Shown one piece after another: positions 5,156-46,344 of a stretch of 64,000 bases of DNA. The stretch comes from Chrysemys picta bellii. Lineage: Eukaryota. The translations under genes and the position numbers were made by a program. The notes beneath the pieces are model-generated. The model saw nothing but the letters and a program-made list of their open reading frames with translations. It did no database searches and had not been told where the DNA came from. How positions within the stretch are numbered: the first letter of the stretch is position 1; every line of letters starts with the position of its first letter. The DNA is taken from contig NC_088794.1 in NCBI RefSeq assembly GCF_011386835.1, forward strand, positions 6,138,001 to 6,202,000. Direction: 5' to 3'.

Positions 5156-5310
5156 TTTTCCTCAGCAGCTTGTCTCTCTTAGATATTGGCTACTCCTCTG
5201 TGTTTGCCCCAAAGACACTGAACCCCCTGATCTACAGCCTGAGGAACAAGGAGGTGAAGGACGCCTTGAGGAGAACAATATATCAGAAAATTATTCCTCG
5301 CTGTATGTAA
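5155..5310 (+). pseudogene. Collapsed OR pseudogene: a copy of the OR at 28718-29662 lacking its 5' end and an internal 609 bp
   Basis: Reads [21 protein letters not shown]|[29 protein letters not shown]. It matches the reverse complement of 29482-29417 joined to 28807-28718. Confidence 0.93.
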
Positions 5311-5636
5311 CTATGGGGACTTTTTTACTGATCAGTATTGGAGCACAAGCATGAGCTAGTTCTGAGTCATTAAGTCAACATGCAGAAATATCCTTCATTA
5401 TTTGATATACAGGAGAAGACAATAAAGAAATGGAAACTTGAGCCAGATAATGCAGGAAGGCGTAATTTCACTTGATAACAATGTCCAGTAACAGTGTTAC
5501 AGCTTTTCCATTATGCATTGTTATGTGATGTCTGCAAGGATAAGTATCTTCCTCATTTGTTTCATTTGCTACCAAACTGTGTCAGCTAGTGTATCAAGGG
5601 ACACAAAGAGATGATATCAAGAATGTAATTTTTTTG

Positions 5637-5963
5637 ACAGGTTTCAGAACAGCAGCCGTGTTAGTCTGTATCCGCAAAAAGAACAGGAGTACTTGTGGCA
5701 CCTTAGAGACTAACACATTTATTAGAGCATAAGCTTTCGTGGACTACAGCCCACTTCTTCGGATGCATACAGAGTGGAATAAATATTGAGGAGATATATA
5801 TACACACATACAGAGAGCATAAACAGGTGGGAGTTGTCTTACCAACTCTGAGAGGCCAATTAAGTAAGAGAAAAAAAACTTTTGAAGTGATAATCAAGCT
5901 AGCCCAGTACAGACAGTTTGATAAGAAGTGTGAGAATACTTACAAGGGGAGATAGATTCAATG
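5637..5963 (-). mobile_element. Penelope-like element terminal fragment (turtle type)
   Basis: Contains GTTTCAGAACAGCAGCCGTGTTAGTCTGTATCCGCAAAAAGAACAGGAGTACTTGTGGCACCTTAGAGACTAAC. The segment is absent from the duplicate arm at ~28388-28392. Family assignment is from recall of turtle repeats. Confidence 0.75.
5727..5766 (-). ncRNA. Minimal type I hammerhead ribozyme motif inside the Penelope fragment
   Basis: Minus strand reads GCAU-CCGAAGA-A-GUGGGC(UGUA)GUCCAC-GAAA-GCUU-AUGC. Stem I is GCAU/AUGC, stem II has 6 bp, stem III is the palindrome AGCU, and the core has a U4-to-C variant. Confidence 0.7.
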
Positions 5964-6295
5964 TTATCACCTCAGTACCCACATCCCACACCAACCATCA
6001 CTTTACAAGGAAATAAAGTACAGTGTATATGTGGAGGTATATTTGTAGATAGACTGACAGATTGATGGTTATGCACAGGGCTGGATGGGTAGCTAGACAG
6101 ATCGATGTGTGGATAGACAGACAGACAAACATCATTGTGTACACACACATGCAAGAGGAAGGATGACGCATTGGCCAACCTAAGACTAATGAGGTCTGAG
6201 TTCAAGTTCCTGCCATGTGACCTTGCTTAGGTCACTGAGAACCAGTTTTTCAATGTGGGTTTGGTGCCTAAATTCCTTTAAGAATCTTGGTCGCA

Positions 6296-6550
6296 GGGCT
6301 TGTCTACACATGAAATGCTATGGAGGCACCGCTGTATTCCTGAAGTGCTACAGTGTAAGCACTACCTATGCTTACGGGAGGGGCTTTCCATTGGTGCAGA
6401 TAATCAGTCTCCCCGCGAGGCGATAGCTAGGTCAACAGAAGAATTCTTCCTTGACCAAACACTGTCTACACTGGGGGTTGGGTCGGTACAGCGACATCCC
6501 TCAGGGGAGTGGATTTTTCTAATTAAAATTCCTAGTGTAGAACAGGCCTT
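6296..6550. mobile_element. Harbinger-type non-autonomous DNA transposon (MITE) inserted in a MIR/CORE-like SINE relic
   Basis: Ends are GGGCTTGTCTACAC...AGTGTAGAACAGGCC-TTA. The flanks carry SINE-like TGTGACCTTG...CTGTAAAATGGGAATAA. Confidence 0.6.
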
Positions 6551-7375
6551 AGTCTCTCTGGGCCTTACTTCCCCAGCTGTAAAATGGGAATAAGAGCACT
6601 TCCCTATCTCACAGATGGGTAAGTACATTGAAGATTGTGAGATGTGCGGCTACTGAAGGAGCAATAAGAGTAGATAAGATCACATATTACACCAAATTAG
6701 CCACCTAGCTGTATACTTACCGGTCTACATTTGAAAAGCGAGTACTGATTCTGGATGCTTCCATTTTTCAGTTCCCAACCTGAGACCACTTCCCGGGACT
6801 GGGTTATCAGACAGCACTGAGCACCTGCCCTCTAAAACCTTTCTAAGAGGTCTCAGCTTGGGCACCCAAAAATTGAAACACCCAATACTATAGCAGAATG
6901 AGAACTCAGCTATAGTTAAGACCAGCCTTCTGTTTAAAACTTGACTGTTCTAAGTGCTCTAAAAGCTACACCACAGTTACTCAGATTGCCTCACAATTTG
7001 GTGTGCCTCATGGGGGTATGGGGCTCTGCTACAAACCCAAATTTGGGGCCATTTGATCACAGAGTTCCAGAGATACCCTAGCCCCAAAGAGCTTTTCTTA
7101 AAATTAACAGATTCTACACTTCTCCTTACCCAACATTAAATCTACAGACTGCTCTTGTCTCCTGCCTCACTATTGACAATACCCATGACAAGAAAAACCC
7201 GCTGCCCTGCTACTGACATAACCTACTCAATTTGGTATTGAAATGATGTAGCCTTAAGGGACACCTGCACCTGTCAGGGATGGTCCAGATAATACTTGGT
7301 CCTGCCTCAGTGAAGGGGACTGGACTAGATGAACTATTGAGGTCCTATCCAGTGCTATATTTTTATGATTTATAT

Positions 7376-11026: not shown

Positions 11027-11968
11027 ATGACTGGAGACAATCACACCACAGTGACCAAGTTCATTCTCGTTGGATTAACAGATTGTGTGGAGCTGCAGGT
11101 CCCTCTTTTTGTCACATTTTTTCTCATCTATCTCATCACCCTGCTGGGGAATATAGGGATGATCTTGGTAATTCAGATCGAGCCCCAACTCCACACGCCC
11201 ATGTACTTCTTCCTCAGCAACTTGTCTTTCCTAGATGTCTGCTATTCCTCCACCATTACTCCCAATATGCTGGTCAATTTCTTAGTGGAGAGTAAAGCCA
11301 TTTCTTACAGCGGGTGCATTACACAATATGGCTTCTTTGTTGTGTTTGTCACCGCTGAGATCTTCCTCCTGGCTGTGATGGCGTATGATCGTTATGTGGC
11401 CATCTGTAATCCACTGCTCTACACAGTCACCATGACCAAGAGGGTCTGCATAACGCTGGTGGTTGGGTCGTATTTCTCGGGCTTGATTAACTCTTTGATA
11501 AACACAAGCAGTTTGCAGAGATTATCCTTTTGTGATTCCAATGTCATCAATAACTTTTACTGTGATCTCACCTCTCTCCTGAAACTCTCCTGCAGTGATG
11601 TCTCTGTCAACGAGAGGCTACTCTTTACCTGCGGCAGTTTGTTTGAAATGAGCACGTTTCTGATCATCATCATCTCGTACATTCTTATTGTAATTGCTGT
11701 GCTGAGGATTCGTTCTGTCCAGGGCAGGCGTAAAGCGTTCGCCACCTGCGCCTCCCACCTGACAGCTGTTACTATGTTCCATGGGACCATTTTCTTCATG
11801 TATTTGCGACCCAGTGCCAGCTACTCACTGGATACAGATCAAATAGCCTCCGTGTTCTATACGATAGTGATCCCCATGTTGAACCCCCTGATCTACAGCC
11901 TGAGGAACAGGGATGTGAAATGTGCTGTAAGGAAAGTGCTAAGTAGAAAAGTGATTATTACTCAGTGA
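11027..11968 (+). CDS. Olfactory receptor, class II, OR5-like (intact, 313 aa)
   Basis: Motifs [34 protein letters not shown] and [12 protein letters not shown], plus an N-terminal NHT glycosylation site. The ORF-track start at 10913 lies upstream of the splice acceptor (AG 11004-11005), so the real start is MTGDNHT at 11027. Confidence 0.95.
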
Positions 11969-12857: not shown

Positions 12858-13214
12858 TAAGTGAGAGAGGCAAAACTCACACCACCTTGTTCTAAGTTAG
12901 CTCTCTGTAGAATGACTCGGATCATAAGTTTCCTTACAGAGCCTCCTCGCTCTGGGTCATCACTTTTCCCAAGGGCAGGACACACAGCCTCAATTGCTCT
13001 GGGACTGGGTGGTGGAGCTCCAGCACCCCCCTGTGTCCCGTTGTGAGCTCCTATAGCAACTCCACCTTAGTTCAGACTCCCATGGAGATTTTACCTTCCT
13101 ATGGAGTGATGCAACCCAGCAAGTGTTTACAGTGACCCGGGGCAGCCTTTTCAAAGCGAGGTAGCATTTCATAGTCACCTGGAGTATTGCATGTGCAAGT
13201 CCTGAGGCTAGCAG

Positions 13215-13600
13215 AGGAAAACCAAACTTAAGAGAAAGTCCAAGTGTAAAAACAGAGTCAGGCCGGCCATAAAAGGATTTGAAGAGCTATTAGCAAAAGA
13301 CACAAAAACAGAAAGTTGTTTTTAAGTACCTCAGCAGCAGGAAGCCTGTTAAGCAACGAATGGGGCCACTGGACAATTGAGGTGCTAAAGGAGCACTCAA
13401 GGAAGATCAGGCCATAGGGAAGAATCTCAATGAATTTTTTGCATCAGTTTTTACTGCAGGACCAGATGGCATTTAAGCATGAGTTCTGAAGGAACTCAAA
13501 TATGAAAATTGCACAACTACTGACTGTGGTATGTAACCTATCCCTGAAATCAGCCTCTGTACCAGATGACTGCAGGAAAGTTAATATAACCCTGATCTTC
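13215..13600 (+). mobile_element. CR1 LINE ORF2 fragment (decayed, internally deleted)
   Basis: Translates to CR1-like FEELLAKDTK...SRKPVKQ..GPLD, then ELKYE/IAQLLTVVCNLSLKSASVPDD. Confidence 0.85.
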
Positions 13601-14709
13601 TGTGGCACAGTTTTCCTCCTGGATTGGAACAGCCGGCTGGAATCCTGCGAGGTACAGAGCAGAGAGAGGTTTGGGCCACAACGTTCACCTCAGAGGCTGA
13701 GCTTCTGCAGACATTTGGGATGTTCCCATCTGAGGAGGATGCTTTTGGCCAGCCCCAGTTCAGAGCTTTCAGTCAGCTCAACCGGTGATTCTCTGGCACA
13801 ACTCATCTAAAGTAGCTGAACTTTTCAGGCCTTGCCCCCATCTCCAACACCCCTTGCACCTCGCATTGCCCTCTAATAGCCCCGTCCCTTCTCTTGATCC
13901 CTGCCAAGCCCAAATACAGAGCCTAGCTCACCCTCCTCCTCTCTTAGACCCTCCCCTCACACGATCCTCCCCTACCTCTGACAGACTGCTCACTGTGCCC
14001 TTCCCTAGCTCCTGGAGGAATCCTGGCTCCTCAGAACAACCTGGGAATGGGCGGTTCCTACCTCTGTGTGGGGTGCGTGGTTTTCCGTCTAGCATCACTG
14101 AGAGCCAGCACGTCTCGATTTCACAGGATGAGGCGATGGCTCCCCAAGCTGGGCCAGCTGCAGGCTGCATTGCTGTGGACAGATCCCAGACATTCGAAGA
14201 CAGAGGAGGAGGAAGCCCCTGCTCATTCCCGGTTCAGAGATCCCCATCGAAGACGGGCCAAGAGGGGAGGAGAGAACGAAGGGCAGAAAGTGAAGCTGCC
14301 TCTGTGGGGAGGGCACTCCTGTAAAACCCAGTCCAGTTCCCAGATCTCCTCCACATTTCCAGGTGTAACTTTGGAGAGGTCATTTCATCACCTTCATTCC
14401 CTGTCTGTAAAATGGGGGTAGTAGTCCCCCCCACAAGGAGGAGAAGGGAGGACAGTCCCATTGTCTGTGAGGGGCTCGGTCCCTCTGGGCACGGATTGTG
14501 CCAGAGTGAGGGAAGGGACCCAGAGTTTACTCCCTAGAGCCAGGGGAGGAGGATGGGATCAGAAGGTCATCCAAGGGGGATGGGTCAGGAACTGCTGCAA
14601 CAGACGGGGCTTAGGGATTCGGTCAGTGCCAGGGACTTGCTACCTCCCTTCAGCAAATGGCTTCCCTCTTCTATCTGACTCCTTCCTAGTGTCCTCGAGG
14701 GGCTCCCTT

Positions 14710-15860
14710 CATTCTTCTTGAATGTAGTGGATTCGTTGACCCAGGTCGATAGCTGGGAAGTGCGGACTGACTATTCGTAGTGTGGCATGAAATCAGTGGG
14801 AAATCTATAGTTAGCAAAATAAAGGTGTCATTGGCCTTTGGAAATTTGGAGCTGATCTGTCCTCTTAGCCGAAGGTACTCGTGCACAGAGGGATGAAGCT
14901 CGCCATCTTGGTCAGGTGATCTATGAGAGTCAGTTCCATCATGTGGCCATTTGAATGAGTGAAATTCTTGGCAATGGCTGCCATGGATGGAGCAGGGTCT
15001 TCAGAGGCCTGAGATGCCAAGAAGTTAGGTGCGTGGTGCCTTGGTGAAAGCGCAGAAGTCACGTGTGTCAAGCTAAGTCTGAATTTCAGCGCACATCTGG
15101 CACCACCAAACAAAGCAGGCCCTGATAGTCATAGTAGATGCGTCTACTTCCATGATAAATGCTGTGCGTCAGAATAGATGCAGTGGTGAAGACAATTCTG
15201 AGCTGTTTGCGGGCTTGTTCGTACTTAGATGACCAAACGAATGTGGCCATTTTGTGGAGGAGAGCTCTCATGCGGGTTATTGGCTCTGAGAACCCTGGGC
15301 CGACGCAGCAGTAAAGCTGGTGAAGTCTAGGAAGTGCTGCTCTTCTTGAGGACTTCAAATTTTGTCCCATTTATGAATGGCTTCCACCTTATTTGCATCA
15401 ATCGTAACACCCCCAAAACTCTGTGGAGAGTTGGCTGGAGGTTCCGCTTTTCCAATTCTGTGTTGAGACCATGCTGCCAAAACCTCTCCGGGTTCGGATG
15501 TGGTGCACGTGCTGCTGACAGTTCTGCACAAAGAGAAGTATGTCACCTGAATAGATGCCACTGTATGGATCCACGATGTCTCCAAATACATCACTGATGA
15601 AGTGTTGCAAGGTCAGGGGATTCACAGCAGGGGGTAAGGGTTCCAAACTATCACTTTTTTCAGGAGGCGATAGTCTAAAGAGCGGCGTAGTCCCACATTT
15701 CTTCTTCCCAAAAAGGGCCTGGTCACCCGTGGGAAACGCTTATTTGCTCATAAACTCTTAGGACTGGTTTTCATGACTGTATGCAGGGAGAGCCACTAAT
15801 TCTGGTTCCAACAACGCGTAAATACAGGTGAAGGCAACTTTCAACCAAGGTTGTAGGTGA
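14710..15860 (-). mobile_element. Ty3/Gypsy LTR-retrotransposon pol relic (RT, RNase H connection, integrase), heavily mutated
   Basis: Contains YALLEPELVAL; LQHFISDVFGDIVDPYSGIYSGDILLF (degenerate YLDD region); GFSEPITRMRALLHKMATFVWS...FTTASILTH; and SNGHMMELTLIDHLTKMASFIPL (integrase-like). Confidence 0.88.
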
Positions 15861-16058
15861 CTAGGGCAGTCTTAGTCCCGGTGCAGAGGCAACGAGTCCA
15901 CATTTCTTTCAAAGATATCCATGTAATCCTGTTTTTTATCAGGAATGCCGGGTGTCCAAGTCAAGAATGGTGGAGTAGGTCCAGGGACGGAGGTTGGTTA
16001 AAGGAACCCCTACATTTCCATTGCACAACTCCAGTAGGAGCAGAATCGGACCAGGCTC

Positions 16059-16668
16059 ATGTAGTGAGGCCATGGTTCACACCTGGAGTGATCTGGCCAC
16101 TTACTTGCGGAGAGCCTGCTTTTCTGCAAAAAGTTGCACAACCTGATGTCACATGCTGCATCTGATAATTAGGTCCAGTGGTTGGAGTGTAGGTCGCAGA
16201 GAGGTGCAGGATGGCACCTAGGCTAAGAGTGAAGCTAGAATCAAGGTCCAGGGACACACCAGGATCAAAACAGAGATCAGAGTCCATCGACAAAGCAGAA
16301 CCAGAGCCAGAGTCCAAGTCCAGGCCAGAGGTCGAAGCCGGTGGTCAGAGACCAAAGATCAGCCAAGTCCATGTCAAGCTAGAGTCCAGATACAGGCTGA
16401 AGATCAAAGCCGGGTAGTCAAAATCCGAGGGGTTGGGGAATATCAGGAGGAGGCAATGCTGGAGCGCGTGGGTGGACGGCCTGGAGCAAGGCTAGAGAAG
16501 GGTAAGGAGAATACTGAGCCAGGGTTGGTAATGAACATCTGGAGCCAAGAAGGGTCATGCCAAAGTCATAGCCAGAGACCGGAGCCAAGAGTCAAACCTG
16601 AGTCAATAGCGAGGAACTGGAGGGCAGGGCAGGGTGATGCATGCAGGCAGGAACCTGGATCACTTACA
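16059..16668 (-). mobile_element. Probable 5' LTR of the Gypsy relic
   Basis: Bounded by TGT...ACA (TGTAGTGAGG to TCACTTACA), with internal short CCAGAGTC/AGCCAGAG-type repeats, directly upstream of pol on the minus strand. No 3' LTR was found. Confidence 0.5.
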
Positions 16669-17303
16669 GGTGCTCCCAGGCACTGCCCACCTGGAGTGCT
16701 AGAGACCCCTCATTGTGTGACTCCCTTCCTAGGAATAAAAGAAGGACAGCAGGATGACAAAGACATCTCAGACCCTGGGGTCCAGGCCAAGGGGAGCTCC
16801 CACCCAGGCTATGTGCCAGGACCCCATCACCCTCCCTGTTCATTTCACACTCAGAGACCCCCTAGCTGGAGGGGAAAATAAAGGGCAGAAAGTGAAGGTG
16901 CCCCTGGGGAAAGGCATTAGCCTAGGACCCAGTCCAGTTCCCAGATCGACACCCAGGATTGTGTGAGCCACCCCTCCCAGACCGCAATGGGTTACTGAGG
17001 ATAACCCCTGGTTCTGAGGATGCTCTCATTTCTGGGCCAGCCCCATGGCCCTGACAGCCTGATTTTTCCAAAACTGGCCTCTGGGCCTGGGGGCAGGGAC
17101 AGTATCTGGCCTGGCCCCAGCTCCAGGGGTCAGGGTGGGGCAGGGTGGTGAGAGCGAGGTGCTCCGCCTGGGTTTCTCTCAGTGCTGTGGGCTCTATGGC
17201 CGCTCCCCCCAGCCCTCCCCCCGCAGGCACAGTGAGACAGAGCAGTACCTGTGGCAGGGGCTGGAGGCTTCTGGTCATGTGAAGCGGGGGGGTGGGTGGG
17301 TCT

Positions 17304-20300
17304 TCAAGGCTGCCCCGCGGAGCACAGCCCCTGCAGTGCTTTGGGAAACTGGAGCAAGCACGTGATGGTAAATAGCTGGGCCATGACCTTCGCAGTAACG
17401 TCCTCCTGCTGCAAGGGAACAAGGATCAATCAGAGACTCCGACACCCACGAGAACAAAGGGGATTCACGGCACCGGGAGCCAGCAAAATTTCCTCCCTAC
17501 CCCCCATGTCTGAGGGACGGATTCCCCCACCCAACCCCCTAGACAAAATCTCATCTCTTCTCCAGTGACTCCCATCCTCTCTCCCATCATTGGGGAATGA
17601 ACTCCTGCCCCCACTCCTCTCAGTCCCCCCGAGAGCTGTTCTACCTCCCAACCCAGCTGGGGATTCCGCTCCGCTCCCCAGAATCCCCTGAGCCGCCCTC
17701 GCCCCCTCCAGCTGAGGGGATGGGAGGCTTTGGGCAGTAGTGCTGGGGGGTGAGAGGAAGTGGACACCTTTCCCCAAGGGATCCCCCATCCTTAACATGA
17801 TGCCATGGGCAGTAGCTCTGGGGAATGGGGCACTTAAGCAGCCTCCGCTGACTGACTCCTCCAGCTCTCCCAGAGCAGGTGGGAGCTGAGATAACATGAT
17901 CCCAGAGCACTAGGAACCGGCCTGAGGCCCGGAGGGGATGAAAGGCTCACAGAGGTGGCTAGGGGAGTTGGCAGCCCCTAGCATGAGCAATGGCAGCGTG
18001 GCGTGTTGATGTGATGCCTGTTAGGAAATAGCCTTGCTGGAGAGCTGGGTCTGCCCTGCTTTGAGCTGCTCAGGGGACAAGCTGGCACCTACCAATGGCA
18101 CCTGCCTGGGTTCATCCTCTCCTTGCTCCCAGGTCAGCGCATGGGGATGGGATGGGAGTGATTTTCAATGGCCTGGAGGTGAAAGGCCCTGGGGTTCCCT
18201 CCCCAGTTGATCCCTCTTTGGTTACCTCGTCCCCTAGCAGCTGGCCGGCTTCCCCCAGGATGGAGTAGGTGAGCAGCAGCCCAGCCTGGCTGACATGGAG
18301 CAGGGGGTGGTGTATGGCCTCCAGCGCCCCCTGAAGAAAAGTTCTTTTCTGCTCTTCCGTGAATATCTCACCAAAGACCTAAAACCAACAGAATCAGAGC
18401 CCTTGCAATGGCTCAGAACCAGGCTCCAAATCCCTCTGGTGGCTCACAAGGTGGAGAAGAGTCCTGGGGCAGCCAACCTTTGGGGTCCCATGGACCAAAG
18501 AACCCCCTTCAGTAAGAGGCTGCAGGCACTGAGGCCTCCAATAGCTCTTTCTGGAGCAGGATTCAACCCAGGTGCCATGAGATGCTGGAAATGGGTCTCC
18601 GCACTTTGAAACCAGCTCACCCAGACACTCTACTGCTCCCAGCAGCGATATCTCCTGCAGCTCACCCGCTAGAGGTGAGGGGTCTTTTAGATCTGGGTCA
18701 TTCCCACGCCTCACCCCACTGACATTCCCAGGAACCTCACATACTCTGCTGCAAATAAGTAGCAGGCTCTTGCCCTGTGTCCATGACACACTCACTGCAG
18801 GGGGAGACAGCTCCACACCTGAGCTGCTGCAATGCACCGGCAGAGAGTCCTTACCTCTCCCACCCTGGCCAGGTTTCTATAGCCCAGGCTCTCGGTGTCC
18901 TGGAGCCCTTCCCGGCACCACAGCTCTCTTCCCTCGGTGATGTTGAGCCCTGGGGGAGAAAGACACACCCATTGGGGAGGTTTGGCATTCCGCTTTCACT
19001 TCCGGTTTCCATCTGGGAGCACACTGGCCAGGGTCCTCGTGGCATCCACAGCCCAATGGAATCGCAGGGTCCATACCAGGTGGTTTAGTACCAGAAGGGG
19101 GATTTGTTTTAGTCATCACAGTAATCATGTGACCCTTAGAGTCATTGTGCTCTGGGAGTGGGTGCCTGTTAATGGTGGTGTCTAATACTGAGAACCCCCC
19201 ACACCCACTGAAGTCAGGATCTGGCCCTGACTACCCAACTGGTGACATCCTACAAGCTTTGTGTCCATCCCCTGTGGTCCCTGCTCCTGCCCCTGCCCTC
19301 ATGATGGGCTCTTTCCCTCCATGTCTCTCAATAGCTCAGTTCCTGTCCCCTCACGAGCTGGCTGCCCTGTGGGTGGGCTATTTCCCTGGGCTGGGGGACA
19401 GAGCCGGGCTCTGAAATAAAGCAGCCAATTTCCCTGACACTTTCATACTCATCTCCCTAATTCAGAGAGAGGGGAAGAGAAAGAGTCATCATCTAAGGTG
19501 GGATCGGTCTCAGAGGAGGGGTCTTCTTTCTGTAGGGTTCCATTGCCCAGCAGAGGGAGTCTCAAAGGAGGGGCCTTGTTTCTATTGGGGTTCCTCTGCC
19601 CTTCTACAGTGGGTCTAAACAGAGAGGCCTTAGTCCTCTAGGCGTCCCAATGGCCAGCTGGAGCTAGTCTCCGAGAGGCTTGTTTCCATGGGGTCCCATT
19701 GCCCAGCTGGGTTCTTACCCCTCTTCTGCACCAGGAGCCTGTGCAGCCAATATATCCCACCCCTGGCTTGCCGGCTGATGTCCTCGGCTGGGTGGGATAC
19801 ATGGAGACCCAGCTGCAGCACAAAGTCGCCTGCCTTGGAGAAGTCAGAGGTGGTCTGGTGGAAGGAGGAGAGGGGAATCCATCAAACTTCTCCCTTCAGC
19901 TCTCCAGCGCCCCTGGGCCAGAGCTCTGCTCCCACCCCTCTGTAGGAGGCGCTGGGCGAGAGGAGCGAGAGCTCTCTGCCCCCAAGGGAGCTTGGAGCAA
20001 AGGGACCAGGGCAAAGGCCCTCTATGAGCACTCACTGCCTAGCTGCTCCAGAATAACAAGGGCCCTGAGGCCAGGCACAAATCTGCCAGCCAGTGGCCTA
20101 TGGAACGCAGTCCCTTGCGGACCCAGGGGGGACCAATTAGCCACGGGATGAGGAACTTGACTCAAGCCCTGACTCTGCAGGATGCTGGGGTCAAAAGTCA
20201 CTTACGTCAAATCCAGGCAGGGAGGTGGTGAATTGGAGCAGGACAGCGCTGTGCTGTATGGCTCTAGCTCTCTCCTGGGTGTTTTTGGACTGGAGCCAGA

Positions 20301-23300
20301 AATGGACGTGCTGCGGGAGAAGGAGGCAGGGGCGGGTCAGCAGGCAGGCGTACATGCTCTACAAACGAGCCTCTCCCCCTCCCGAAGGGGCTGAGACTTT
20401 GTGCTCAGGGTGGAATAGCTACAGAGCTTGAAAAGGAGGTCCATGACACTGCCCATGTCTTGCTGGGCACAAGCTCATTGTCTCTCCAGGCTGGGACAAT
20501 GGTCAGTCTTCGGGCTGGTCTATTTGCCCTGAACCCCTGATCCATGAACAGCACGTCAGGATCAAGGCACATGCCCTGGACCCCAGACTCCAGCTGCAAG
20601 GGCCTTGGTAGGATGGATGGAACGGCCGTGAGGACAATCCCTCCGGGAACTGCAGTGTCCCTAGGACAGAAGAGCTGATTCCCTGAGGCTCCTCCTGTAT
20701 CTCAGGGTCTCCCTAGAGAGGAGCCAGTGACTTTTCTCAGAGGCCCATGTCCTGCATCTCACAGGGGTTTGTCTCTCAGTCCCCGGCCAGGCCTGCTGCT
20801 CACTGTTAGTGCTTAATGCAACCGTGCAGAGCTCTGGCTGACAGTCCCAGCTCCTTCCCCCTGCACTGGCAGCTCTGGGAAAGTGTGGCCGGCTGGGTCC
20901 AAGCTGGAAGGACACAATGGAAATGTGGCTCTTCTAATCTCTCCTTTGCTGCCCTCCCCCAGGGTTCAGGGGCAATTCCACCCCAGACCGTCCCATTCTA
21001 CTCACCTCCAAGAGGTGCTGCAGCTTCTCCAAGCTGGAGGTCTCTGTCAGCAGGCCCCTGAGCATGCTGTCCAGGCTCTGCAAAAAGCTCTTGTGGAGAG
21101 CCTGCAAGAGGAGGGAGCACCCGTCAGTCAAGGGACATGGGGCCACACCAGCCAGGGGACAATTAGGAGGATTCTCTAGGAGCCCTGGCAAGACTCAAAA
21201 GGCACATCCTGGCCTCTCCCATTCACATCACTCCAGAGAGACTAAGCAAAAGTTCATGGCCGGATGCCTGCTGCCTCTTCAATCCTTGCTCTTAGCAGTT
21301 CTCTGCACAGCGCCTGGTACCCAGCAGACTATGGAACAGCCAAACTGCAGTGGGTGGGAAGTAGGATCCCCGGGAGAGTCCAGGCAGCAGAGCACAGAAT
21401 GAGGAGAGGAGGGAAGGCTGGGATCAGCCACGGAGGGGTAATGCAATCCCCTCTGGAGGGAAGGGGCCCCCACGGCCTGTTCCCAGCTCTGCTCACCCCT
21501 CCCCTATTCTCAGCAGCTCTATCAAAGTGAGGGAGCAGGGACCAGAGCCTGCTCCTGCTCCGGGGACAGAGAAGTAGGATCAGGACCTACCTGGAAGTGG
21601 GGGGTGTCGTTCCCAGTGCCCATGGTGAAGATCTGGTGGAGAAGCGCGCTCAGGAGGCGAGATTCCAGCTCCAGGGACAGTGGTGGCTTCAGTTTGCTGG
21701 CAGAAGAGAGGAGCCTGTCGTACACTTTGCAGCACCAGTGTTGTGCTGGCACTGGCATGGACATCACCCCCTCCCCCACAGTGATCCCCTCCCCACAGCC
21801 ACTGTAACGTTCCTGGAGTGAAATCCACCCCCCAGCCAGGAAAGAGGGGACGTTCCCGCCTCCTCTGCTGGGGGATGGGAACAGCCACAGCTGGGGGTAA
21901 CCTAGGCGGAGGAGGATCTGTGACTCCCAGCTCTGGGCCCGATCAGCACCAGGGTTAGGGCAGCTGGACGGGAGGGTCCTGATACCTGAGGCTGCAAACC
22001 ACGTCCATGGAGCTGGAAATGATGGAGCTCGGCTCTGACACCACAGGGAGAATTTCAATCAGCTCCTGGGAGACCCCAAGGAAACAAAACCGTGTGTGAG
22101 ACCAGGCCCCGCAGACCCACAGGCACTTCCCAGGGTGGAGGCCAAAGTGCTCTGCAGAAACAGCCAGTGTCACCCCCACCCCCAACCAGCTGGGCCCCCC
22201 ATTCCTCCCATCCATCAAACTTCCTTCCCCCTCTCCCACCCAATTCCTCCCTCCCCTACCCTCCGGGCTTACAATTCCCCCACTGCCAGCTCAGTGTCAC
22301 AATTATCCCCTTCCCTGCTCCCCAGCCCTCAGCCCCAGGAACCCCTGTCCTCTGCTTCCCCCTCTGGCCCCACTAACGCTTCCTCCCATGTCTGGCTCCC
22401 TCGCCCCAGGGGCCGGGCACGGGGTCCCACTCACCGCAATGCTCTCCACAAGGGCTGCTTTGGAAATATAGGGCTCCAGGGTGTCCCACCCCTGCTGCTG
22501 TGCCAAGACACACAGACTCAGCACAGCGTCGAGGAAGCGGAGCTGATGGGCCCTGTTCCCCATCAGCTAGGAGTGGGGTGGGGGTAGAGAGAGAGAGCCT
22601 GTTACATAGGGACCTCCCCGCCCAACCCAACCCAACTCCAGGGCTCAGGACCTCCATGGGGTTGGACAGGAAAAGCCGCCCCTTCCTGAAACCAGTGTTG
22701 CCCGGCACAGACCGGGGTTGTAACTTGGACAGTGTCTGCGGGGAGCGGAAACCTTGGCCTGTGTGGGACAAATGTCCCCACTTTGGGGTGCCAGAGAACA
22801 GAGGAGACATGTCCCCCCATTGGGGGTGAGGGATTCTCTGGGACAAGACCCCCCTGCCTGGGTGGAGATGGAACAAGGGGCAGGACGGACTCGGTGGCAG
22901 TGCAGCTGGGGGATTTTTGTACCTTATCTCTGCCCTGGAGATACTGCTGGATCTCTGTGATGATGTCTTGTTCCAGGGACACATCTTCCTCCTCCTCCTC
23001 TTCCTCTTTCTCGTCCTCATGGGCACTGGGGGGCTCTGCACCAGGGAGGGAAGGAGAAAGTATAATCCCTTCTGCTGCTGGGGGGATGCAGTGGACAGAG
23101 AAGGCTCCATGTTTCCCCCTTCTCTGTAAGGAGCCCCATGGCAGCGCGGGCCCCACCCTGCCCCTGCGAGAGACGCCCTCAGCCCCATGAGCCTCAGGGC
23201 CCCATGGCAGTCAGTCCCCCCTCCCCCCACATGATCAGGGGAGGCTGGAGATCCCCAACTCCACCCAGCATCCCCTGCCGTGGGGTGTGGCTGTGCCCCC

Positions 23301-24097
23301 CCCCACTGGTGTTAGTGGGGCTCACATGGGTCAGTCCAGGCACCTTGGCGAGCCGATGGGCACAGGAGGTTACTAGTCCCCCACCGCCCCAGTCCTCCTC
23401 CCTTTCCCCTGGGTCTCCCCTCACCTGCAAAGAGGGAGCACTCATCCGCAGGCCTGTCAGACCATGCAGAGGAGCTGCTGGCCCCTCCGGAGTATGCGAA
23501 GCTGCTGGTGTTTGTCCCAGAGTCGCTCAGCTCCTGCTCTGGGCTGGCGGGGGGCTCCTCAGTGGCCAGGGTGGGGCTGGCAGGGGGCTCCTCAGGGGCC
23601 AGTTTGGGGCTGGCGCAGGGCTCCTCAGTTGCCAGGGTGGGGCTGGCGCAGGGCTCCTCAGGGGCCAGGGTGGGGCTGGCAGGGGGCTCCTCAGTGGCCA
23701 GGGTGGGGCTGGCGCAGGGCTCCACAGTTGCCAGGGTGGTGGGTGGCTCCTGCTGGGCCCTGGGGTGCAGCTCCTGGCTCCTTGGCTTCCTGTGAAGGAA
23801 GCCCCAGAGCTGCCTTGCCCGGCTCCTGCCCTCTCCTGGCTCCCTCCTCCATAGCTGTACCCGGGGCCACCTCCATTTGGGCCCAGAAGGTGCCTCAGGG
23901 TCAGCTAGGGGAGCTGGTGTCATCCACTTCCTGCAGCATGCCAGGCAGCTCCTCTGTTTATGCTGGCCACCAGCCTCTTCCCCGCCCGTGGGGCCAGAGG
24001 GGCCGCTCTCCTGCTCAGAAAGACGGATGTTCTTTCCCTCTGGCTCTGGAGCCACCTGCCTGGCCTTCCTCCTGAGCATCTGCCTCAGCCGCTCCAT
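17304..24097 (-). CDS. 11-exon Maestro/HEAT-like-repeat (MROH-family-like) protein, 597 aa, frame apparently intact
   Basis: Exons 24097-23425, 23035-22923, 22566-22435, 22065-21986, 21696-21591, 21101-21006, 20310-20206, 19854-19719, 18949-18855, 18378-18226 and 17408-17304. All introns are GT-AG with compatible phases; the total is 1794 nt. Helical segments include ALHKSFLQSLDSMLRGLLTE, HVHFWLQSKNTQERARAIQHSAVLL and VFGEIFTEEQKRTFLQGALEAIHHPLLHVSQAGLLL. The family call is from recall, not a search. Confidence 0.82.
23541..23750 (-). repeat. Coding 33-bp minisatellite (~6 copies of EEP[P/C]ASPTLA[T/P]) in exon 1 of the MROH-like gene
   Basis: The 11-aa periodicity is visible in ORF 23312..24097. 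Confidence 0.92.
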
Positions 24098-25904
24098 CCT
24101 GGAACTGAGTGGGGAGCAGCCGTGAGTCTGGGTTCAAGGCAGCCTCTCATTAATGGGGCCTGCCTGCTCCCCTGCCCACCTCCCCTCCGCTGAGGCAATT
24201 CCTCCTCCCCACACATCCCACCCCAGGGCACAGGAACCCTCATCCTGGGGAACAAACTCTGCCAAGGGACGGGCTGGAAGCCCTATTGGTGGGATATTTC
24301 CACCACACTGGGGATGGCTCTGGAGAGCTCCACTTACTTACTCTAGATGGGATGGAGCTGGATTGCAGATGCTTGCTGTTGGTCCTTCCTTTACCCTCCT
24401 CCTCAATCTCCTGCACCCAGGTGGGCTGGAAAGGGTGCTGTACAATGCCCTGCCAGCAGGGCAGGGGGTAGAAGTCAGGAGATCGAAAGTGGCTGTGAAA
24501 ACAAGATGATGTTTTATTGCCAGGTGATGGATAAACTCAGGCCAGCAGCCAGGGGGTCACCACACTGACCGACGTCCAGCAGGACACCTCCCATCTCAAG
24601 GTCTCCTAGTAACTTACGCACATTCCTGAAATGTGAGGGCCCAAGGGCTCTAGGGGAATGTCCCCAGCCCCACTGATGGAAACAGAGGCCTTGGCAGGAG
24701 AAGCCACTGCCTCAGGGTTGCGCTGGGAGTCAGGGATAGAGTCGGGGATGGAGCCCAGGAGTCCTTTGTCCAGGCTCCCGTACTAACCGCTAGAGGAACA
24801 CTCCCTTCCAGAGCTGGGAAGTGCCAGCAGGACTCTGTTCCCAGTCTCCCTGGCTCTGAGTGTGACCTATGGAGCTGGTGGAATCTTCATCCTTCGAGAT
24901 TTGTAAGGCCCAGCTTGGCCAAAAAAAAAATCATCTACTTAAAATTAAATGTGAAATTGACAACCTTTTGTTAAGGGCGAAATTTATGACAATCTTTTAA
25001 ATAATGTTCTTTTTTCTCTTCTATTTAAATTAAGTGGAATATGTTCACTGCCAAGTTTTTCAGACAGTCGCACCACTGATGTGGTAGCTAAGGCCCTGGA
25101 AGCAAAGTTAGCTGAAATGCTAGCCTAGCTTTGGACAGCAATAACTTCCTTGAAAGGTGCAGAAAATATTGTTTTCATTTCAGTTTATTCAAATAGTTCA
25201 GCTCAATCGACTAGTTCGTTGAAATTCAAGAAAGCCATTGGGAGTTCACAAAACAGGCAAACTTGTTTTCCTCCCTCAATCTATGGATAATCTATGGATC
25301 TACTAGTTCATAAATCTAAAAACACGTGGAGACCAGAATGTATCATTTCAGTTCAATAACCACACATCAAATTTCCTTAGTTTAAGAAATCAGTTAGTTT
25401 TAATTGCAAAACATTTTTGATATAACTTTTTTCTTATGCTTCTCTTTCTAGCTCTGGTATGACCTTGCTGTGTGACCAAAGAGAGGTCACTTCCTTTCTC
25501 TTTCCCTCTGTATCATGGGGATGGAGAAAATTCTCCCAGTCCCAGCAGAAGAGAGATTTGAGCACGTCAGGCGTGTTAGGGCCCTTGTGCTCTAAAGGAC
25601 AATGGGTGATTGTTGTTTGGGGCAAGAATCCTGACGTATTTGCTACTTGTCTCCTACCCAAAGCCAAGATCACATCTCTGTGTTTGCAATCATGAGTTAG
25701 AAATTCTCAGCACCCCTCTGTCTCCTGCAGCCCCCAAGTGTTCCTTGGATTATGGAGGCTTGGATGCTAACAGGACTGGAATTTGTTACTGGCTCCCTGG
25801 ATGGTTCTAGCCAATGAGGGTCTCCATCTAGCCTCAGAGGCCCACACCCCCAGACACTACAGATCAGCGTGGATTGATTTCATTCCAAATATTTTGTATT
25901 TGTA

Positions 25905-26185
25905 GTGGTGGCCGATGACAGAACAAGGAGCAATGGTCTCAAGTTGCAGTGGGGGAGGTTTAGGTTGGATATTAGGAAACACTATTCCACTAGGAGAGTG
26001 GTGAAGCACAGGAATAGGTTACCTAGGGAGGTGGTAGAATCTCCTTCCTTACAAGTTTTTAAAGCTCAGCTTGACAAAGCCCTGGCTGGGATGATTAAGT
26101 TGGGGTTGGTCCTGCTTTGAGCCGGGGGGTTGGACTAGAGACCTCCTGAGGTCTGTTCCAGCCCTAGTCTTCTATGATTCTATGA
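25905..26185 (+). mobile_element. CR1 LINE 3' end
   Basis: Reads [21 protein letters not shown]...[17 protein letters not shown], ending in CTATGATTCTATGA. Confidence 0.93.
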
Positions 26186-26683: not shown

Positions 26684-27183
26684 NNNNNNNNNNNNNNNNN
26701 NNNNNNNNNNNNNNNNNNNNNNNNNNNNNNNNNNNNNNNNNNNNNNNNNNNNNNNNNNNNNNNNNNNNNNNNNNNNNNNNNNNNNNNNNNNNNNNNNNNN
26801 NNNNNNNNNNNNNNNNNNNNNNNNNNNNNNNNNNNNNNNNNNNNNNNNNNNNNNNNNNNNNNNNNNNNNNNNNNNNNNNNNNNNNNNNNNNNNNNNNNNN
26901 NNNNNNNNNNNNNNNNNNNNNNNNNNNNNNNNNNNNNNNNNNNNNNNNNNNNNNNNNNNNNNNNNNNNNNNNNNNNNNNNNNNNNNNNNNNNNNNNNNNN
27001 NNNNNNNNNNNNNNNNNNNNNNNNNNNNNNNNNNNNNNNNNNNNNNNNNNNNNNNNNNNNNNNNNNNNNNNNNNNNNNNNNNNNNNNNNNNNNNNNNNNN
27101 NNNNNNNNNNNNNNNNNNNNNNNNNNNNNNNNNNNNNNNNNNNNNNNNNNNNNNNNNNNNNNNNNNNNNNNNNNNNNNNNNNN
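26684..27183. other. Assembly gap (500 N)
   Basis: Run of N bases. Confidence 1.
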
Positions 27184-29482
27184 TCAATAGTTCATCTAGT
27201 CCAGTCCCCTTCACTGAGGCAGGACCAAGTATTATCTGGACCATCCCTGACAGATGCATGTGTCCCTTAAGGCTACATCATTTCAATACCAAATTGAGTA
27301 GTTTATGTCAGTAGCAGGGCAGCGGGTTTTTCTTGTCATGGGTATTGTCAATAGTGAGGCAGGAGACAAGAGCAGTCTGTAGATTTAATGTTGGGTAAGG
27401 AGAAGTGTAGAATCTGTTAATTTTAAGAAAAGCTCTTTGGGGCTAGGGTATCTCTGGAACTCTGTGATCAAATGGCCCCAAATTTGGGTTTGTAGCAGAG
27501 CCCCATACCCCCATGAGGCACACCAAATTGTGAGACAATCTGAGTAACTGTGGTGTAGCTTTTAGAGCACTTAGAACAGTCAAGTTTTAAACAGAAGGCT
27601 GGTCTTAACTATAGCTGAGTTCTCATTCTGCTATAGTATTGGGTGTTTCAATTTTTGGGTGCCCAAGCTGAGACCTCTTAGAAAGGTTTTAGAGGGCAGG
27701 TGCTCAGTGCTGTCTGATAACCCAGTCCCGGGAAGTGGTCTCAGGTTGGGAACTGAAAAATGGAAGCATCCAAAATCAGTACTCACTTTTCAAATGTAGA
27801 CCAGTAAGTATACAGCTAGGTGGCTACTTTGGTGTAATACGTGATCTTATCTACTCTTATTGCTCCTTCAGTAGCCGCACATCTCACAATCTTCAATGTA
27901 CTTACTCCCCTGTGAGATAGTCTCTCTGGGCCTCGCGGGGAGACTGATTATCTGCACCAACGGAAAACCCCTCCCATAAGCATAGGTAGTGCTTACACTG
28001 TAGCACTTCAGGAATACAGCGGTGCCTCCATAGCATTTTACGTGTAGACAAGCCCTGCGACCAAGATTCTTAAAGGAATTTAGGCACCTAACCCACATTG
28101 AAAAACTGGTTCTCAGTGACCTAATCAAGGTCACATGGCAGGAACTTGAACTCAGACCTTATTAGCCTTAGGTTGGCCAATGGGTCATCCTTCCTCTTGC
28201 ATGTGTGTGTGTGTACAATTATGTTTGTCTGTCTGTCTATCCACACATCGATCTGTCTAGCTACCCATCCAGTCCTGTGCATAACCATCAATCTGTCAGT
28301 CTATCTACAAATATACCTCCACATATACACTGTACTTTATTTCTTTGTAAAGTGATGGTTGGTGTGGGATGTGGGTACTGAGGTGATAAACCAAAAAAAT
28401 TACATTCTTGATATCATCTCTTTGTGTCTCTTGATACACTAGCTGACACAGTTTGGTAGCAAATGAAACAAATGAGGAAGATACTTATCCTTGCAGACAT
28501 CACATAACAATGCATAATGGAAAAGCTGTAACACTGTTACTGGACATTGTTATCAAGTGAAATTACGCCTTCCTGCATTATCTGGCTCAAGTTTCCATTC
28601 CTTTATTGTCTTCTCCTGTACATCAAATAATGAAGGATATTTCTGCATGTTGACTTAATGACTCAGAACTAGCTCATGCTTGTGCTCCAATACTGATCAG
28701 TAAAAAAGTCCCCATATTTACATACAGCGAGGAATAATTTTCTGATATATTGTTCTCCTCAAGGCGTCCTTCACCTCCTTGTTCCTCAGGCTGTAGATCA
28801 GGGGGTTCAGCATGGGGATCACCAGGGTATAGAACACAGCCACCACTTTATCCTGATCTGCTGAGTTACTGGAGCTGGGGCGCAGATACATAAAGAAGAG
28901 AGTCCCATACAGCATAGCAACGACCGTCAGGTGGGAGGCGCAGGTGTTGAAGGCTTTGCGCCTGCCCTCAGAAGAGCGGATCCTTAGGATGGCAAAGATG
29001 ATATATGTGTAGGAGACAAGGATGATCACAATGGTTACAATGGTTGCTATAGCTGCAAAGGTGAAATGCACCAGCTCATCGATGCGAGTGTTGGAGCATG
29101 AGATCTTTTGGAGAGGAGGGATGTCACAGAAGAAATGATCAAGGACATTGAAGTGGCAGAAGGACAGAGAAAACAAAGAACTAGTGTGGGTGATTGCACT
29201 GGCAAAAGCATAGAGATAAGAGCCCACCACCAACTGGATGCAGACTCTCCTGGACATAACTACATGATAAAGCAATGGTTTGCAGATGGCTACAAAGCGA
29301 TCGTAGGCCATCACTGCCAGGAGGCAAAGCTCGGTGTTGGCACAAAGAGAGAGGAAGAAAAACTGAACCACACACCCTGCAAAAGAAATGTCTTTAGTCT
29401 CTGTAGAAAAGATGACCAGTGTCTTTGGGGCAATCACAGAGGAGTAGCCAATATCTAAGAGAGACAAGCTGCTGAGGAAAAA
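27184..29482 (-). repeat. Right arm of the inverted segmental duplication (partner 5155-7340); runs into the gap
   Basis: Reverse-complement match to 5155-7340. Confidence 0.95.
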
Positions 29483-29662
29483 ATACATGGAGGTGTGGAG
29501 TCGGGAATCAACACGGATTAACATGATCATCCCTAGATTCCCCACCAGGGTGCAGAAATAGATGAAGGAGAATGTCATGAAGAGGATGATTTGCAGCTTT
29601 GGATTTTCTGTTATTCCCTGGAGGATGAAGCCAGTCACTGTGGTATAATTCCCCAGTGCCAT
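28718..29662 (-). CDS. Olfactory receptor, class II, OR5-like (intact, 314 aa)
   Basis: Motifs [41 protein letters not shown] and [16 protein letters not shown]. Confidence 0.96.
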
Positions 29663-45405: not shown

Positions 45406-46344
45406 ATGGCGCATGGCAATCATACTGGAGTGTCCATGTTCATCCTTCTAGGATTCAAAGGCAGTCGATCGCTGCAAGCTGTCCTCTTTGGGATGTTTTT
45501 GCTTATCTACAGCATGAGCCTAGTGGGGAATCTCAGCATGATCTCTTTGATCAGGATCGAGACGCGGCTACACACCCCCATGTATTTTTTCCTCAGCAAC
45601 TTGTCCCTTGTAGACCTCACTTACTCTTCCATTATTGCCCCTAAGGCACTGGTGAACTTCTTAGCAGAGAGTAAAGTCATTTCCTTTGCTGGGTGTGCCA
45701 CGCAATTTTTTTTTCACTCCTTCTCTGTGAACTCTGAGGGTTTACTTCTGGCTGTGATGGCATATGATCGCTTCATAGCTATATGCAAGCCGCTGATGTA
45801 CACGCTCATTATGTCCAGGAAAGTCTGGGTCCAGTTGGTAGTGGCATCATACATTTATGCCTCCATTAATGCCATTGTGCATACAGGCTCTTTGTTCAGC
45901 CTGTCCTTCTGTGGCCCCAATATCATTGATCACTTTTTCTGTGACATCCCCCCACTCCAGAAACTCTCCTGCTCTGACACTCGCGTGGGTGACACAGTGC
46001 ATTTCCTCTTTGCTGCTGTAGCTGCACTAAGTACTATCCTGGTCATCCTCATTTCCTATGTTTCTATCATGGTGGCCATCTTGCGGATCCGCTCCAACGA
46101 GGGCAGACGCAAAGCTTTCTCCACCTGCACCTCCCACCTGATGGCTGTGTCCATACTGTATGGGGCTCTGTTCTTTATGTACTTACGACCCACATCCAGC
46201 AACTCATCAGAGTACGACAAAGTGGTGTCCATGTTCTATACCCTTGTGATCCCCATGTTGAACCCCCTGATCTACAGCCTGAGGAACAAGGAGGTGAAGG
46301 ACGCCTTGAGGAAGACAATATACCAGAAAATTATTCCTCGCTGA
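45406..46344 (+). CDS. Olfactory receptor, class II, OR5-like (intact, 312 aa); close paralog of 28718-29662
   Basis: Motifs [41 protein letters not shown] and [27 protein letters not shown]. The ORF-track start at 45355 precedes the splice acceptor at 45384. Confidence 0.96.

What the first reader, a model, noticed from the sequence alone, without database searches (positions are those of the whole stretch)
17304..24097. Hidden intact 11-exon MROH-like gene inside an OR cluster
The ORF track shows only disconnected pieces. Eleven exons with canonical GT-AG sites and matching phases splice into a stop-free 597-aa frame. The protein has a basic N-terminus, a Pro/Glu/Thr repeat, an acidic run (DEKEEEEEEED) and a helical HEAT-like C-terminal half. 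It resembles the poorly characterised Maestro-like families expanded in sauropsids (from recall). An intact multi-exon non-OR gene between OR duplication arms may be a lineage-specific paralog of unknown function.
Basis: partly seen in the sequence, partly recalled or inferred. Interest (0 to 1): 0.7.

Follow-up and report, generated by a model that had tools for sequence, protein, structure and literature searches.

The report
Unlisted turtle Maestro-like HEAT-repeat gene
This is a real, intact, spliced and transcribed 11-exon gene between smell-receptor genes of an emydid turtle; it is one more copy of a large, already annotated but unstudied reptile family of shortened Maestro (MROH5/7-like) HEAT-repeat proteins, so it is a sound gene call and not a new kind of gene.

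Summary
On the minus strand, 24097-17304, eleven exons with GT-AG borders and matching phases give 597 codons plus TGA. Spliced contigs from four public runs join the exons at the predicted bases for seven introns. The other three are supported indirectly.

The interpretation also holds. A profile built from 64 relatives, none from this window, finds all eleven exons one by one and in order. Turtle paralogs 60-82% identical pass Pfam HEAT_Maestro. The Trachemys ortholog, 91-100% identical over exons 2-6, passes HEAT_Maestro_2.

The protein is a disordered N-terminal half plus a central slice of the MROH5/MROH7 architecture. It lacks the first and last HEAT blocks of the long proteins.

Short relatives are numerous and dispersed in turtles. 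They also occur in squamates and alligator.

No painted-turtle protein of 143-667 residues matching this locus was found. In Trachemys the locus is listed as two "uncharacterized" fragments.

Function is unknown; a HEAT scaffold with a fast-evolving tail is inferred. Tissue, dN/dS and the joined-protein searches were not obtained.

Verdict: new member of a known kind.

The parts
23425..24097 (-). Exon 1: start codon at 24097, 224 codons plus 1 base. Basic N-terminal helix, Cys-Cys motif, Pro/Glu/Thr repeat, Ser-rich stretch; predicted disordered.
   Evidence: 31 turtle proteins match it. Trachemys P0001 is 93% alike outside the repeat. Contigs of three runs stop aligning exactly at 23425. The paralog model is disordered over residues 1-180.
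23541..23747 (-). 33-bp tandem repeat, 6.2 copies, inside exon 1. It encodes the 11-residue Pro/Glu/Thr repeat, and copy number differs among relatives.
   Evidence: TRF. In-frame 66-nt skip 23564->23631 in an X1 contig. Repeat-number gaps in the alignment.
22923..23035 (-). Exon 2: acidic run followed by the first conserved helix.
   Evidence: Family profile i-Evalue 4e-6. Trachemys ortholog 97%. The E1/E2 joint is not shown directly because the aligner skipped the GAG repeat at 22979-23022.
22435..22566 (-). Exon 3.
   Evidence: Joint 22566->22923 CT..AC in X1, X6 and X8. Profile 4e-12. Ortholog 98%.
21986..22065 (-). Exon 4.
   Evidence: Joint 21696->21986 in X1, X2 and X6. The E3/E4 join is seen only as an X6 joint with one extra letter and as loose ends that read the end of E3. 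Ortholog 100%.
21591..21696 (-). Exon 5.
   Evidence: Joints on both sides. Profile 3e-12. Ortholog 100%.
21006..21101 (-). Exon 6: end of the HEAT_Maestro_2-like part.
   Evidence: Joints 21100->21590 and 20310->21006. Profile 6e-11.
20206..20310 (-). Exon 7: start of the HEAT_Maestro part.
   Evidence: Joints in X1, X2, X6 and X8. Profile 2e-16.
19719..19854 (-). Exon 8.
   Evidence: Pfam PF21047 E=0.0013, positions 26-68 of 229, on this exon alone. Profile 1e-22. An X8 contig with 2 mismatches in 137 carries both joints.
18855..18949 (-). Exon 9.
   Evidence: Joints 18948->19718 and 18376->18853. Profile 5e-12.
18226..18378 (-). Exon 10.
   Evidence: Profile 4e-24. Contigs leave the genome at 18225/18226 and continue with a paralog's exon-11 sequence.
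17304..17408 (-). Exon 11 with stop TGA at 17306-17304. Tandem NAGNAG acceptor (17408 or 17405).
   Evidence: Paralogs end at the same stop. Outside the stretch given to read laying, so there is no direct joint.
24098..24500 (-). Conserved upstream region, probably 5' UTR and promoter. It has no in-frame ATG here, although some tortoise models read it as coding.
   Evidence: tblastn of P0018 and P0021, 74-88% over 24500-24363. Contigs run on colinearly upstream of 24132 in paralogs. Upstream ATGs open a frame that overlaps the start codon.
16294..16620 (-). Downstream region homologous to the tail of some paralog models. It has stops here and is probably 3' UTR.
   Evidence: tblastn of P0038, P0045 and P0057.
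20423..20539 (-). Piece of intron 6 used as the last coding exon in the Trachemys model LOC117882545 (alternative 3' end).
13500..24800 (.). GC-rich (51-69%), CpG-poor (o/e 0.1-0.5) block that holds the gene, set in 36-47% GC surroundings. There is no CpG island at the start.

Best explanation
The locus is a functional-looking, transcribed protein-coding gene. It belongs to the reptile family of short MROH5/MROH7-like (Maestro HEAT-like repeat) genes.

Shown: eleven exons splice into 597 codons. Exons 2-6 correspond to the last ~140 positions of Pfam HEAT_Maestro_2. Exons 7-11 correspond to positions 1-185 of the 229 in HEAT_Maestro. Exon 1 encodes about 225 residues that match only turtle proteins. 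In a paralog model this part is disordered apart from a short basic N-terminal helix.

Inferred: the protein is a compact alpha-solenoid of about sixteen helices (about eight HEAT-like hairpins) that acts as a protein-binding scaffold. Its repeat-bearing, acidic, fast-changing tail would tune partners or localisation. By analogy with MRO and MROH2B a gonad or sperm role is the best guess, but the tissue was not learned.

Inferred: the copy arose by DNA-level duplication, since it keeps its introns. It came into an OR cluster as a GC-rich block and predates the Chrysemys-Trachemys split.
For: Exon model and phases. Spliced contigs with exact joints from four runs of four studies. Family profile hits all 11 exons in order. 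Annotated paralogs are colinear with the same borders, start and stop: (Caretta P0062 has all eleven parts).

Pfam on relatives: PF21047 at 59-87 bits and PF23210 at 33-39 bits, all above cut-off. Exon 8 alone gives PF21047 E=0.0013. The AlphaFold model of P0062 has residues 1-180 at pLDDT about 30 and residues 181-531 all-helical at pLDDT above 90. Its best Foldseek matches are armadillo/HEAT solenoids.

The ortholog in Trachemys is 91-100% alike over E2-E6 and 93% over E1. All 12 listed small indels among relatives' contigs lie outside the coding exons, which make up 28% of the stretch. The only coding length change listed is an in-frame loss of two repeat units.
Against: Purifying selection is not demonstrated. 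There are 6 changes in about 175 residues over E2-E6 against Trachemys, and about 8% in exon 1. Both are near what neutral drift could give.

Many family members are fragmentary models, so the family clearly produces dead copies. There is no CpG island, upstream ATGs overlap the start, and no AATAAA lies within 4.3 kb of the stop.

Many laid contigs are only 90-95% alike and come from paralogs, and near-identical partial copies exist on unplaced painted-turtle scaffolds. Part of the RNA signal may therefore not come from this locus.

The runs are only guessed to be RNA and their tissue is coded. Pfam on the window's own exons stays below the gathering score.
Confidence: 0.8

Rival explanations
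1. A transcribed but functionless young duplicate. The frame is open only because too little time has passed, and the locus is on its way to becoming one of the family's many pseudogene fragments.
For: Protein divergence from the Trachemys ortholog is close to a neutral expectation, especially in exon 1. The family is full of partial models. Annotation pipelines split the locus in Trachemys, and no matching painted-turtle product was found. The translation context is weak and no canonical poly(A) signal was found.
Against: Eleven exons, ten intact splice pairs and 597 codons have been kept since before the Chrysemys-Trachemys split. Listed indels among relatives avoid the coding exons. Positions conserved across the family are kept in every exon. 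The same 11-part layout is kept in sea turtles at 40-70% identity.
Confidence: 0.17
2. The eleven exons are only part of a longer gene, with further coding exons upstream of 24097 (there is an AG at 24100-24099) or downstream of 17304, as in full-length MROH5/7.
For: Some tortoise models read 24500-24363 as coding and splice into the first exon. Some paralog models continue into 16294-16620. The long MROH proteins carry more HEAT blocks on both sides.
Against: In this locus the upstream conserved stretch has no in-frame ATG, and the downstream stretch has stops. Most paralogs, and snake short forms too, start at the same Met and end at the same stop. Contigs run colinearly, not spliced, upstream of the start. 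Neither the family profile nor the long MROH proteins find any further exon in the 64-kb window.
Confidence: 0.03

Closest known systems
Annotated short MROH5/7-like paralogs of turtles, e.g. Caretta caretta XP_048674482.1 (P0062, 531 aa, named 'MROH family member 1') and Chelonia mydas 'MROH5' (P0042, 379 aa)
   Same: The order of parts, the exon borders, the start Met and the stop are the same. P0042 is 68-82% identical exon by exon and P0062 is 40-70%. They have the same Pfam pair: PF23210 tail plus PF21047 positions 1-185.
   Different: This copy has six Pro/Glu/Thr repeat units where most relatives have none to five. It sits in an OR cluster, and its product was not found among listed painted-turtle proteins.
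Trachemys scripta elegans LOC117882545 (XP_034636868.1, P0098) and LOC117882587 (P0001)
   Same: They are orthologous. P0098 is 91-100% identical over exons 2-6, and P0001 is 93% over exon 1. Both lie on the same 347.66-Mb chromosome record.
   Different: They are listed as two separate 'uncharacterized' proteins: exon 1 read on into intron 1, and a model that starts at an ATG in intron 1 and ends in intron 6. Neither holds exons 7-11.
Long MROH5 and MROH7 (HEATR8) of lizards and mammals (Lacerta XP_033020610.1, Meles XP_045857541.1, Lemur XP_045382937.1)
   Same: The HEAT_Maestro_2 to HEAT_Maestro junction region is homologous at 28-34% identity. These are the nearest long proteins in the exhaustive search.
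   Different: They have about 1080-1310 residues, with HEAT_MROH2B_1st, the full 650-position HEAT_Maestro_2, the complete HEAT_Maestro and HEAT_MROH2B_C. The turtle gene keeps only a central slice of about 330 residues and adds an unrelated disordered N-terminus.
MRO (Maestro), the short founding member of the family
   Same: It is a short protein built on Maestro-type HEAT repeats, with reproductive-tissue expression and unknown function (PMC5391009).
   Different: From my own knowledge, MRO is about 250 residues and lacks a long disordered N-terminal half. No direct comparison was run here.

Membership tests
MROH (Maestro HEAT-like repeat) family | Significant match of the protein itself to Pfam HEAT_Maestro (PF21047) | tested here: inconclusive
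Searched exon by exon only. Exon 8 gives E=0.0013 and 19.1 bits against a cut-off of 27.4; the other exons give no hit.
MROH (Maestro HEAT-like repeat) family | Close relatives pass PF21047 and PF23210 over the parts that align to this gene's exons | tested here: met
   P0024, P0029, P0042 and P0062 score 57-87 bits on PF21047 positions 1-174 or 1-185, over residues that align to E7-E11. P0098 (ortholog), P0042 and P0062 score 33-39 bits on PF23210 positions ~510-649, over E2-E6.
MROH (Maestro HEAT-like repeat) family | Alpha-solenoid (HEAT/ARM-like) fold | tested here: met
   Tested on paralog P0062, not on the window protein. Residues 181-531 are all-helical with pLDDT above 90. The top Foldseek matches are armadillo and HEAT proteins (E about 2e-4, low TM 0.2-0.37).
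Full-length MROH5/MROH7 architecture | HEAT_MROH2B_1st, the whole of HEAT_Maestro_2, the whole of HEAT_Maestro, and HEAT_MROH2B_C | tested here: not met
   Only PF23210 positions ~510-649 and PF21047 positions 1-185 are represented. Neither the long proteins nor the family profile find further exons in the window.
Short MROH5/7-like family of turtles | Same eleven parts in the same order, shared exon borders, shared start and stop, and the turtle-type N-terminal exon | tested here: met
   Profile hits are colinear, at HMM positions 5-434. tblastn borders coincide. The N-terminal profile also finds Pelodiscus members (1e-8 to 1e-19) but not squamates (E about 2).

The most novel reading that the evidence does not exclude
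The short MROH5/7-like genes of turtles may be a distinct, old (at least crown-cryptodire), dispersed and rapidly turning-over multigene family. It would have arisen when a central slice of an MROH5/7 gene gained a new disordered first exon. Its members would then spread as intron-bearing GC-rich DNA blocks, exchange sequence by conversion and evolve fast at the N-terminus. That pattern is typical of germline-expressed genes under conflict or sexual selection. On this reading the present locus is an intact, unlisted member, and its position beside OR genes recurs in the green turtle.
Probability: 0.3. Interest if true: 0.5.

Novelty: new member of a known kind. Interest (0 to 1): 0.3.

Why it matters
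For annotation, this is a complete 597-codon gene that appears to be missing from the listed painted-turtle proteins and is split in two in the slider. The exon table given here can repair both.

For biology, it draws attention to a large reptile expansion of shortened Maestro-type HEAT proteins that the held literature does not discuss. Even the parent family has no established function (PMC5391009).

In itself the locus is an ordinary paralog. It does not open a long-standing question.

Tried and rejected
- Pfam on raw ORF pieces gave nothing useful. Exact exons gave only one sub-threshold hit.
- An exon-like piece at 18668-18621 in intron 9 was rejected. Its phases do not fit, no relative matches it, and the profile does not hit it.
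- An exon at 19456 downward was rejected because it meets a stop after the phase-1 donor of E8.
- The loose end at 24132 first looked like an upstream splice. It is paralog divergence, since the loose letters are about 70% like the genome there (by eye).
- The joint 23827->24093 is not an intron of exon 1. It is the start of a second expressed paralog type.
- Homology of exon 1 to squamate N-termini was suggested by BLAST (E=0.02-0.03 in a database of 18 proteins). The turtle N-terminal profile did not confirm it (E about 2).
No paralog or ortholog DNA could be fetched, so there is no dN/dS, no duplicon boundaries and no synteny.
- Four literature searches found no paper on this expansion.
- Every search was run exon by exon by reference or with database relatives.
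Full report
**The sequence**

The feature is on the minus strand.

| Exon | Coordinates |
|---|---|
| E1 | 24097-23425 |
| E2 | 23035-22923 |
| E3 | 22566-22435 |
| E4 | 22065-21986 |
| E5 | 21696-21591 |
| E6 | 21101-21006 |
| E7 | 20310-20206 |
| E8 | 19854-19719 |
| E9 | 18949-18855 |
| E10 | 18378-18226 |
| E11 | 17408-17304 |

- An exon-by-exon check shows AG before and GT after every internal exon.
- The incoming phases are 0,1,0,0,2,0,0,0,1,0,0, and the split codons read GAG, AGC and GGG.
- There are no internal stops.
- E11 has a tandem NAGNAG acceptor (17408 or 17405).
- The Pro/Glu/Thr repeat is a 33-bp unit in 6.2 copies at 23541-23747.
- The acidic run lies in E2.

**Transcription and splicing**

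Fourteen public runs hold a tenth to three tenths of the sampled words of the locus. The coding exons make up 26% of the stretch.

I laid four runs from four studies on 18200-24199. The 6000-letter limit forced me to leave out E11.

- Depth peaks fall on the ten exons.
- Joints with CT..AC ends, the minus-strand GT..AG, fall at the predicted bases for E10/E9, E9/E8, E8/E7, E7/E6, E6/E5, E5/E4 and E3/E2. Each is seen in one to three runs.
- E4/E3 is seen as one X6 joint with an extra letter, and as loose ends that read the end of E3.
- The E1 donor is supported because contigs of X1, X6 and X8 stop aligning exactly at 23425.
- The X6 contig of 360 letters has 190 letters on E1. Its depth equals that of the contig carrying the E2/E3 joint with 56 letters on E3. 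Since 190 + 113 + 57 = 360, it spans E1-E2-E3. The E1/E2 joint itself was hidden because the aligner skips the GAG repeat at 22979-23022.
- At 18225/18226 contigs leave the genome and continue with a paralog's E11-like sequence.

Caveats apply. The runs are only guessed to be RNA, although the spliced contigs argue for it. Tissue and species are coded. About half of the laid contigs are only 90-95% alike, so they come from paralogs.

Low-depth contigs over introns, 1-6% different from the window, show that this locus or its ortholog is itself represented in the runs.

**Family**

Pfam on the window's own exons gives a single sub-threshold hit: E8 on PF21047 HEAT_Maestro, E=0.0013, positions 26-68 of 229. 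The relatives decide the case.

- E1 finds 31 turtle proteins with meaningless automatic names. Some of them carry PF21047.
- The C-terminal part of one of these (P0024) finds 61 turtle proteins. NCBI names them MROH7, MROH1, MROH5, MROH8-like or HEATR8, and they carry PF21047 with or without PF23210.
- Laid on the window by tblastn, they are colinear with E1-E11. They share the exon borders, the start Met and the stop.
- Caretta P0062 (531 aa) has all eleven parts at 40-70% identity. Chelonia P0042 has E2-E11 at 68-82%.
- P0062 and P0042 score 74-87 bits on PF21047 positions 1-185 and 33-35 bits on PF23210 positions ~510-649.
- A profile built from 64 relatives, none from this window, hits each of the eleven exons separately. 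All hits are on the minus strand, at HMM positions running from 5 to 434 without a change of order, with i-Evalues from 1.7e-3 to 4e-24. It hits nothing else in the 64 kb above noise.

**Architecture**

Long MROH5/MROH7 proteins read HEAT_MROH2B_1st, HEAT_Maestro_2 (650 positions), HEAT_Maestro (229) and HEAT_MROH2B_C.

The turtle gene keeps only the last ~140 positions of the second block and the first ~185 of the third. In front of these sits exon 1.

An AlphaFold model of P0062 with the family alignment shows the following:
- Residues 1-180 are disordered, at pLDDT about 30, apart from a short basic helix at the very start.
- Residues 181-531 form a confident all-helical repeat, at pLDDT above 90.
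- The model's pTM is 0.67.

Foldseek places the model among armadillo/HEAT solenoids such as designed ARM proteins, importin-alpha, SF3B1, beta-catenin and IntS4. E is about 2e-4, and the TM-scores are low, as usual for solenoids of different curvature.

These results are for a paralog. The joined window protein was not searched or folded.

**Spread**

The exhaustive search with P0042 gives 311 cluster representatives at E<=1e-3, of which 97 are at E<=1e-30. The names looked up show:
- many Pelodiscus copies;
- Emydura and Platysternon;
- Alligator;
- short forms in Crotalus, Vipera, Thamnophis, Pogona, Phrynocephalus, Podarcis and Hemicordylus;
- as nearest long proteins, MROH5 of Lacerta, Paroedura, Meles and Macrotis, and MROH7 of Lemur, at 28-34% identity.

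Snake short forms share the E9 and E10 borders and end at the E11 equivalent.

In Mauremys reevesii the hits lie on at least eleven different chromosomes or scaffolds. The family is therefore dispersed.

The turtle N-terminal profile reaches Pelodiscus (1e-8 to 1e-19) but not squamates (E about 2). As far as tested, exon 1 is a turtle feature.

**Orthology and annotation**

Trachemys P0098 (LOC117882545, 261 aa) is 97, 98, 100, 100 and 91% identical to E2-E6. It starts at an ATG in intron 1 (23139) and ends in a piece of intron 6 (20539-20423).

Trachemys P0001 (LOC117882587, 201 aa, same chromosome record) is 93% identical to E1 apart from fewer repeat units. It reads on into intron 1.

The slider ortholog is therefore listed as two "uncharacterized" fragments.

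No painted-turtle protein matching this locus appeared in two word searches that together cover 143-667 residues. This supports "hidden", but it does not exclude a model outside that length range.

Earlier notes of this scan call the genome painted turtle. The near-identical painted-turtle fragment P0134 agrees with that.

**Constraint**

Three indirect signs are available.

- Against Trachemys there are 6 changes in about 175 residues of E2-E6 and about 8% in E1. The intron pieces that the slider models read as protein show 6 changes in 71 positions. This is suggestive, not significant.
- All 12 listed small indels among relatives' contigs lie in introns or the leader. Coding exons are 28% of the stretch and are covered far more deeply. 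The one listed coding length change removes exactly two repeat units. Thirteen further indels were not shown.
- The positions conserved in the family are kept in every exon.

Some features fit a narrowly expressed gene or a decaying one equally well:
- there is no CpG island (o/e 0.15-0.3);
- three upstream ATGs open a frame that overlaps the start;
- no AATAAA or ATTAAA lies within 4.3 kb after the stop.

**Setting**

- Five intact OR ORFs (7tm_4, E about 1e-50) lie at 10913, 28718, 45355, 52077 and 61780.
- Inverted arms 5218-7340 and 28810-27184, 96-99% alike, bracket the spacer that holds one OR and this gene.
- The gene lies in an 11-kb GC-rich block (51-69% GC against 36-47% around it). 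Retroelement fragments lie within its 3' part and just beyond its 5' edge.
- The introns are kept, so the copy was made at the DNA level.
- A green-turtle model (P0032) begins with residues that match the antisense strand of OR genes. A family copy therefore lies beside an OR there too.

**Function**

Nothing here shows what the protein does. My committed reading is a small HEAT-type scaffold that binds partner proteins, with a disordered tail that changes quickly in sequence and repeat number.

By analogy a reproductive-tissue role is the best guess. MRO is expressed in gonads and has no known function (PMC5391009). MROH2B is a sperm head membrane protein tied to PKA signalling (PMC13195163). 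I put the gonad guess at about 40%.

**Verdict**

This is a new and apparently unlisted member of a known, annotated and unstudied family. Interest is modest.

Not done:
- joined-protein searches and fold;
- the E10/E11 joint (length limit of read laying);
- tissue of expression (coded runs).

Noticed in passing
window 25905-26120 (+) and 15355-15646 (-): There is a CR1-type LINE tail ORF just outside the GC-rich block, and a pol-like retroelement fragment inside its 3' part.
   Followed up: no
window 5218-7340 and 27184-28810: Inverted duplication arms 96-99% alike. The right arm abuts the assembly gap 26684-27183 and overlaps the end of the OR at 28718-29662.
   Followed up: partly
window 11570-11758, 45949-46137, 61993-62085, 28931-29095: The first 62 residues of the green-turtle 'HEATR8' model P0032 match the antisense strand of the window's OR genes. 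That model also holds two tandem copies of the family's exons. So a family copy lies next to an OR in Chelonia too, and the model is chimeric.
   Followed up: partly
window 23827-24094: In run X8 a deeply covered joint and loose end replace most of exon 1 with the start 'MARLLRMFRK'. This is the Caretta/Natator-type subfamily, a second paralog type with more coverage than this locus.
   Followed up: partly
window 19633-19854: Painted-turtle protein P0134 (four accessions, five unplaced contigs) is 97% alike to exon 8 plus the intron behind it, but only 65% alike in exon 7. It is a mosaic that suggests gene conversion or very recent partial copies.
   Followed up: no
window 13000-17304 and 24098-24243: No AATAAA or ATTAAA lies on the minus strand for 4.3 kb after the stop. 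Upstream ATGs at 24243, 24216 and 24150 open a frame that ends at 24088, across the start codon.
   Followed up: no
window 18621-18668 (-): An exon-like piece in intron 9 has an AG before it and a GT after it, and its reading looks helical. Its phases do not fit, and no relative or profile matches it, so it is probably chance.
   Followed up: yes
proteins P0112 and P0081: These are database models that fuse the family's HEAT part to other domains: C2H2 zinc fingers (854 aa, source unnamed) and a KRAB domain (Dermochelys). They are either chimeric predictions or real fusions.
   Followed up: no
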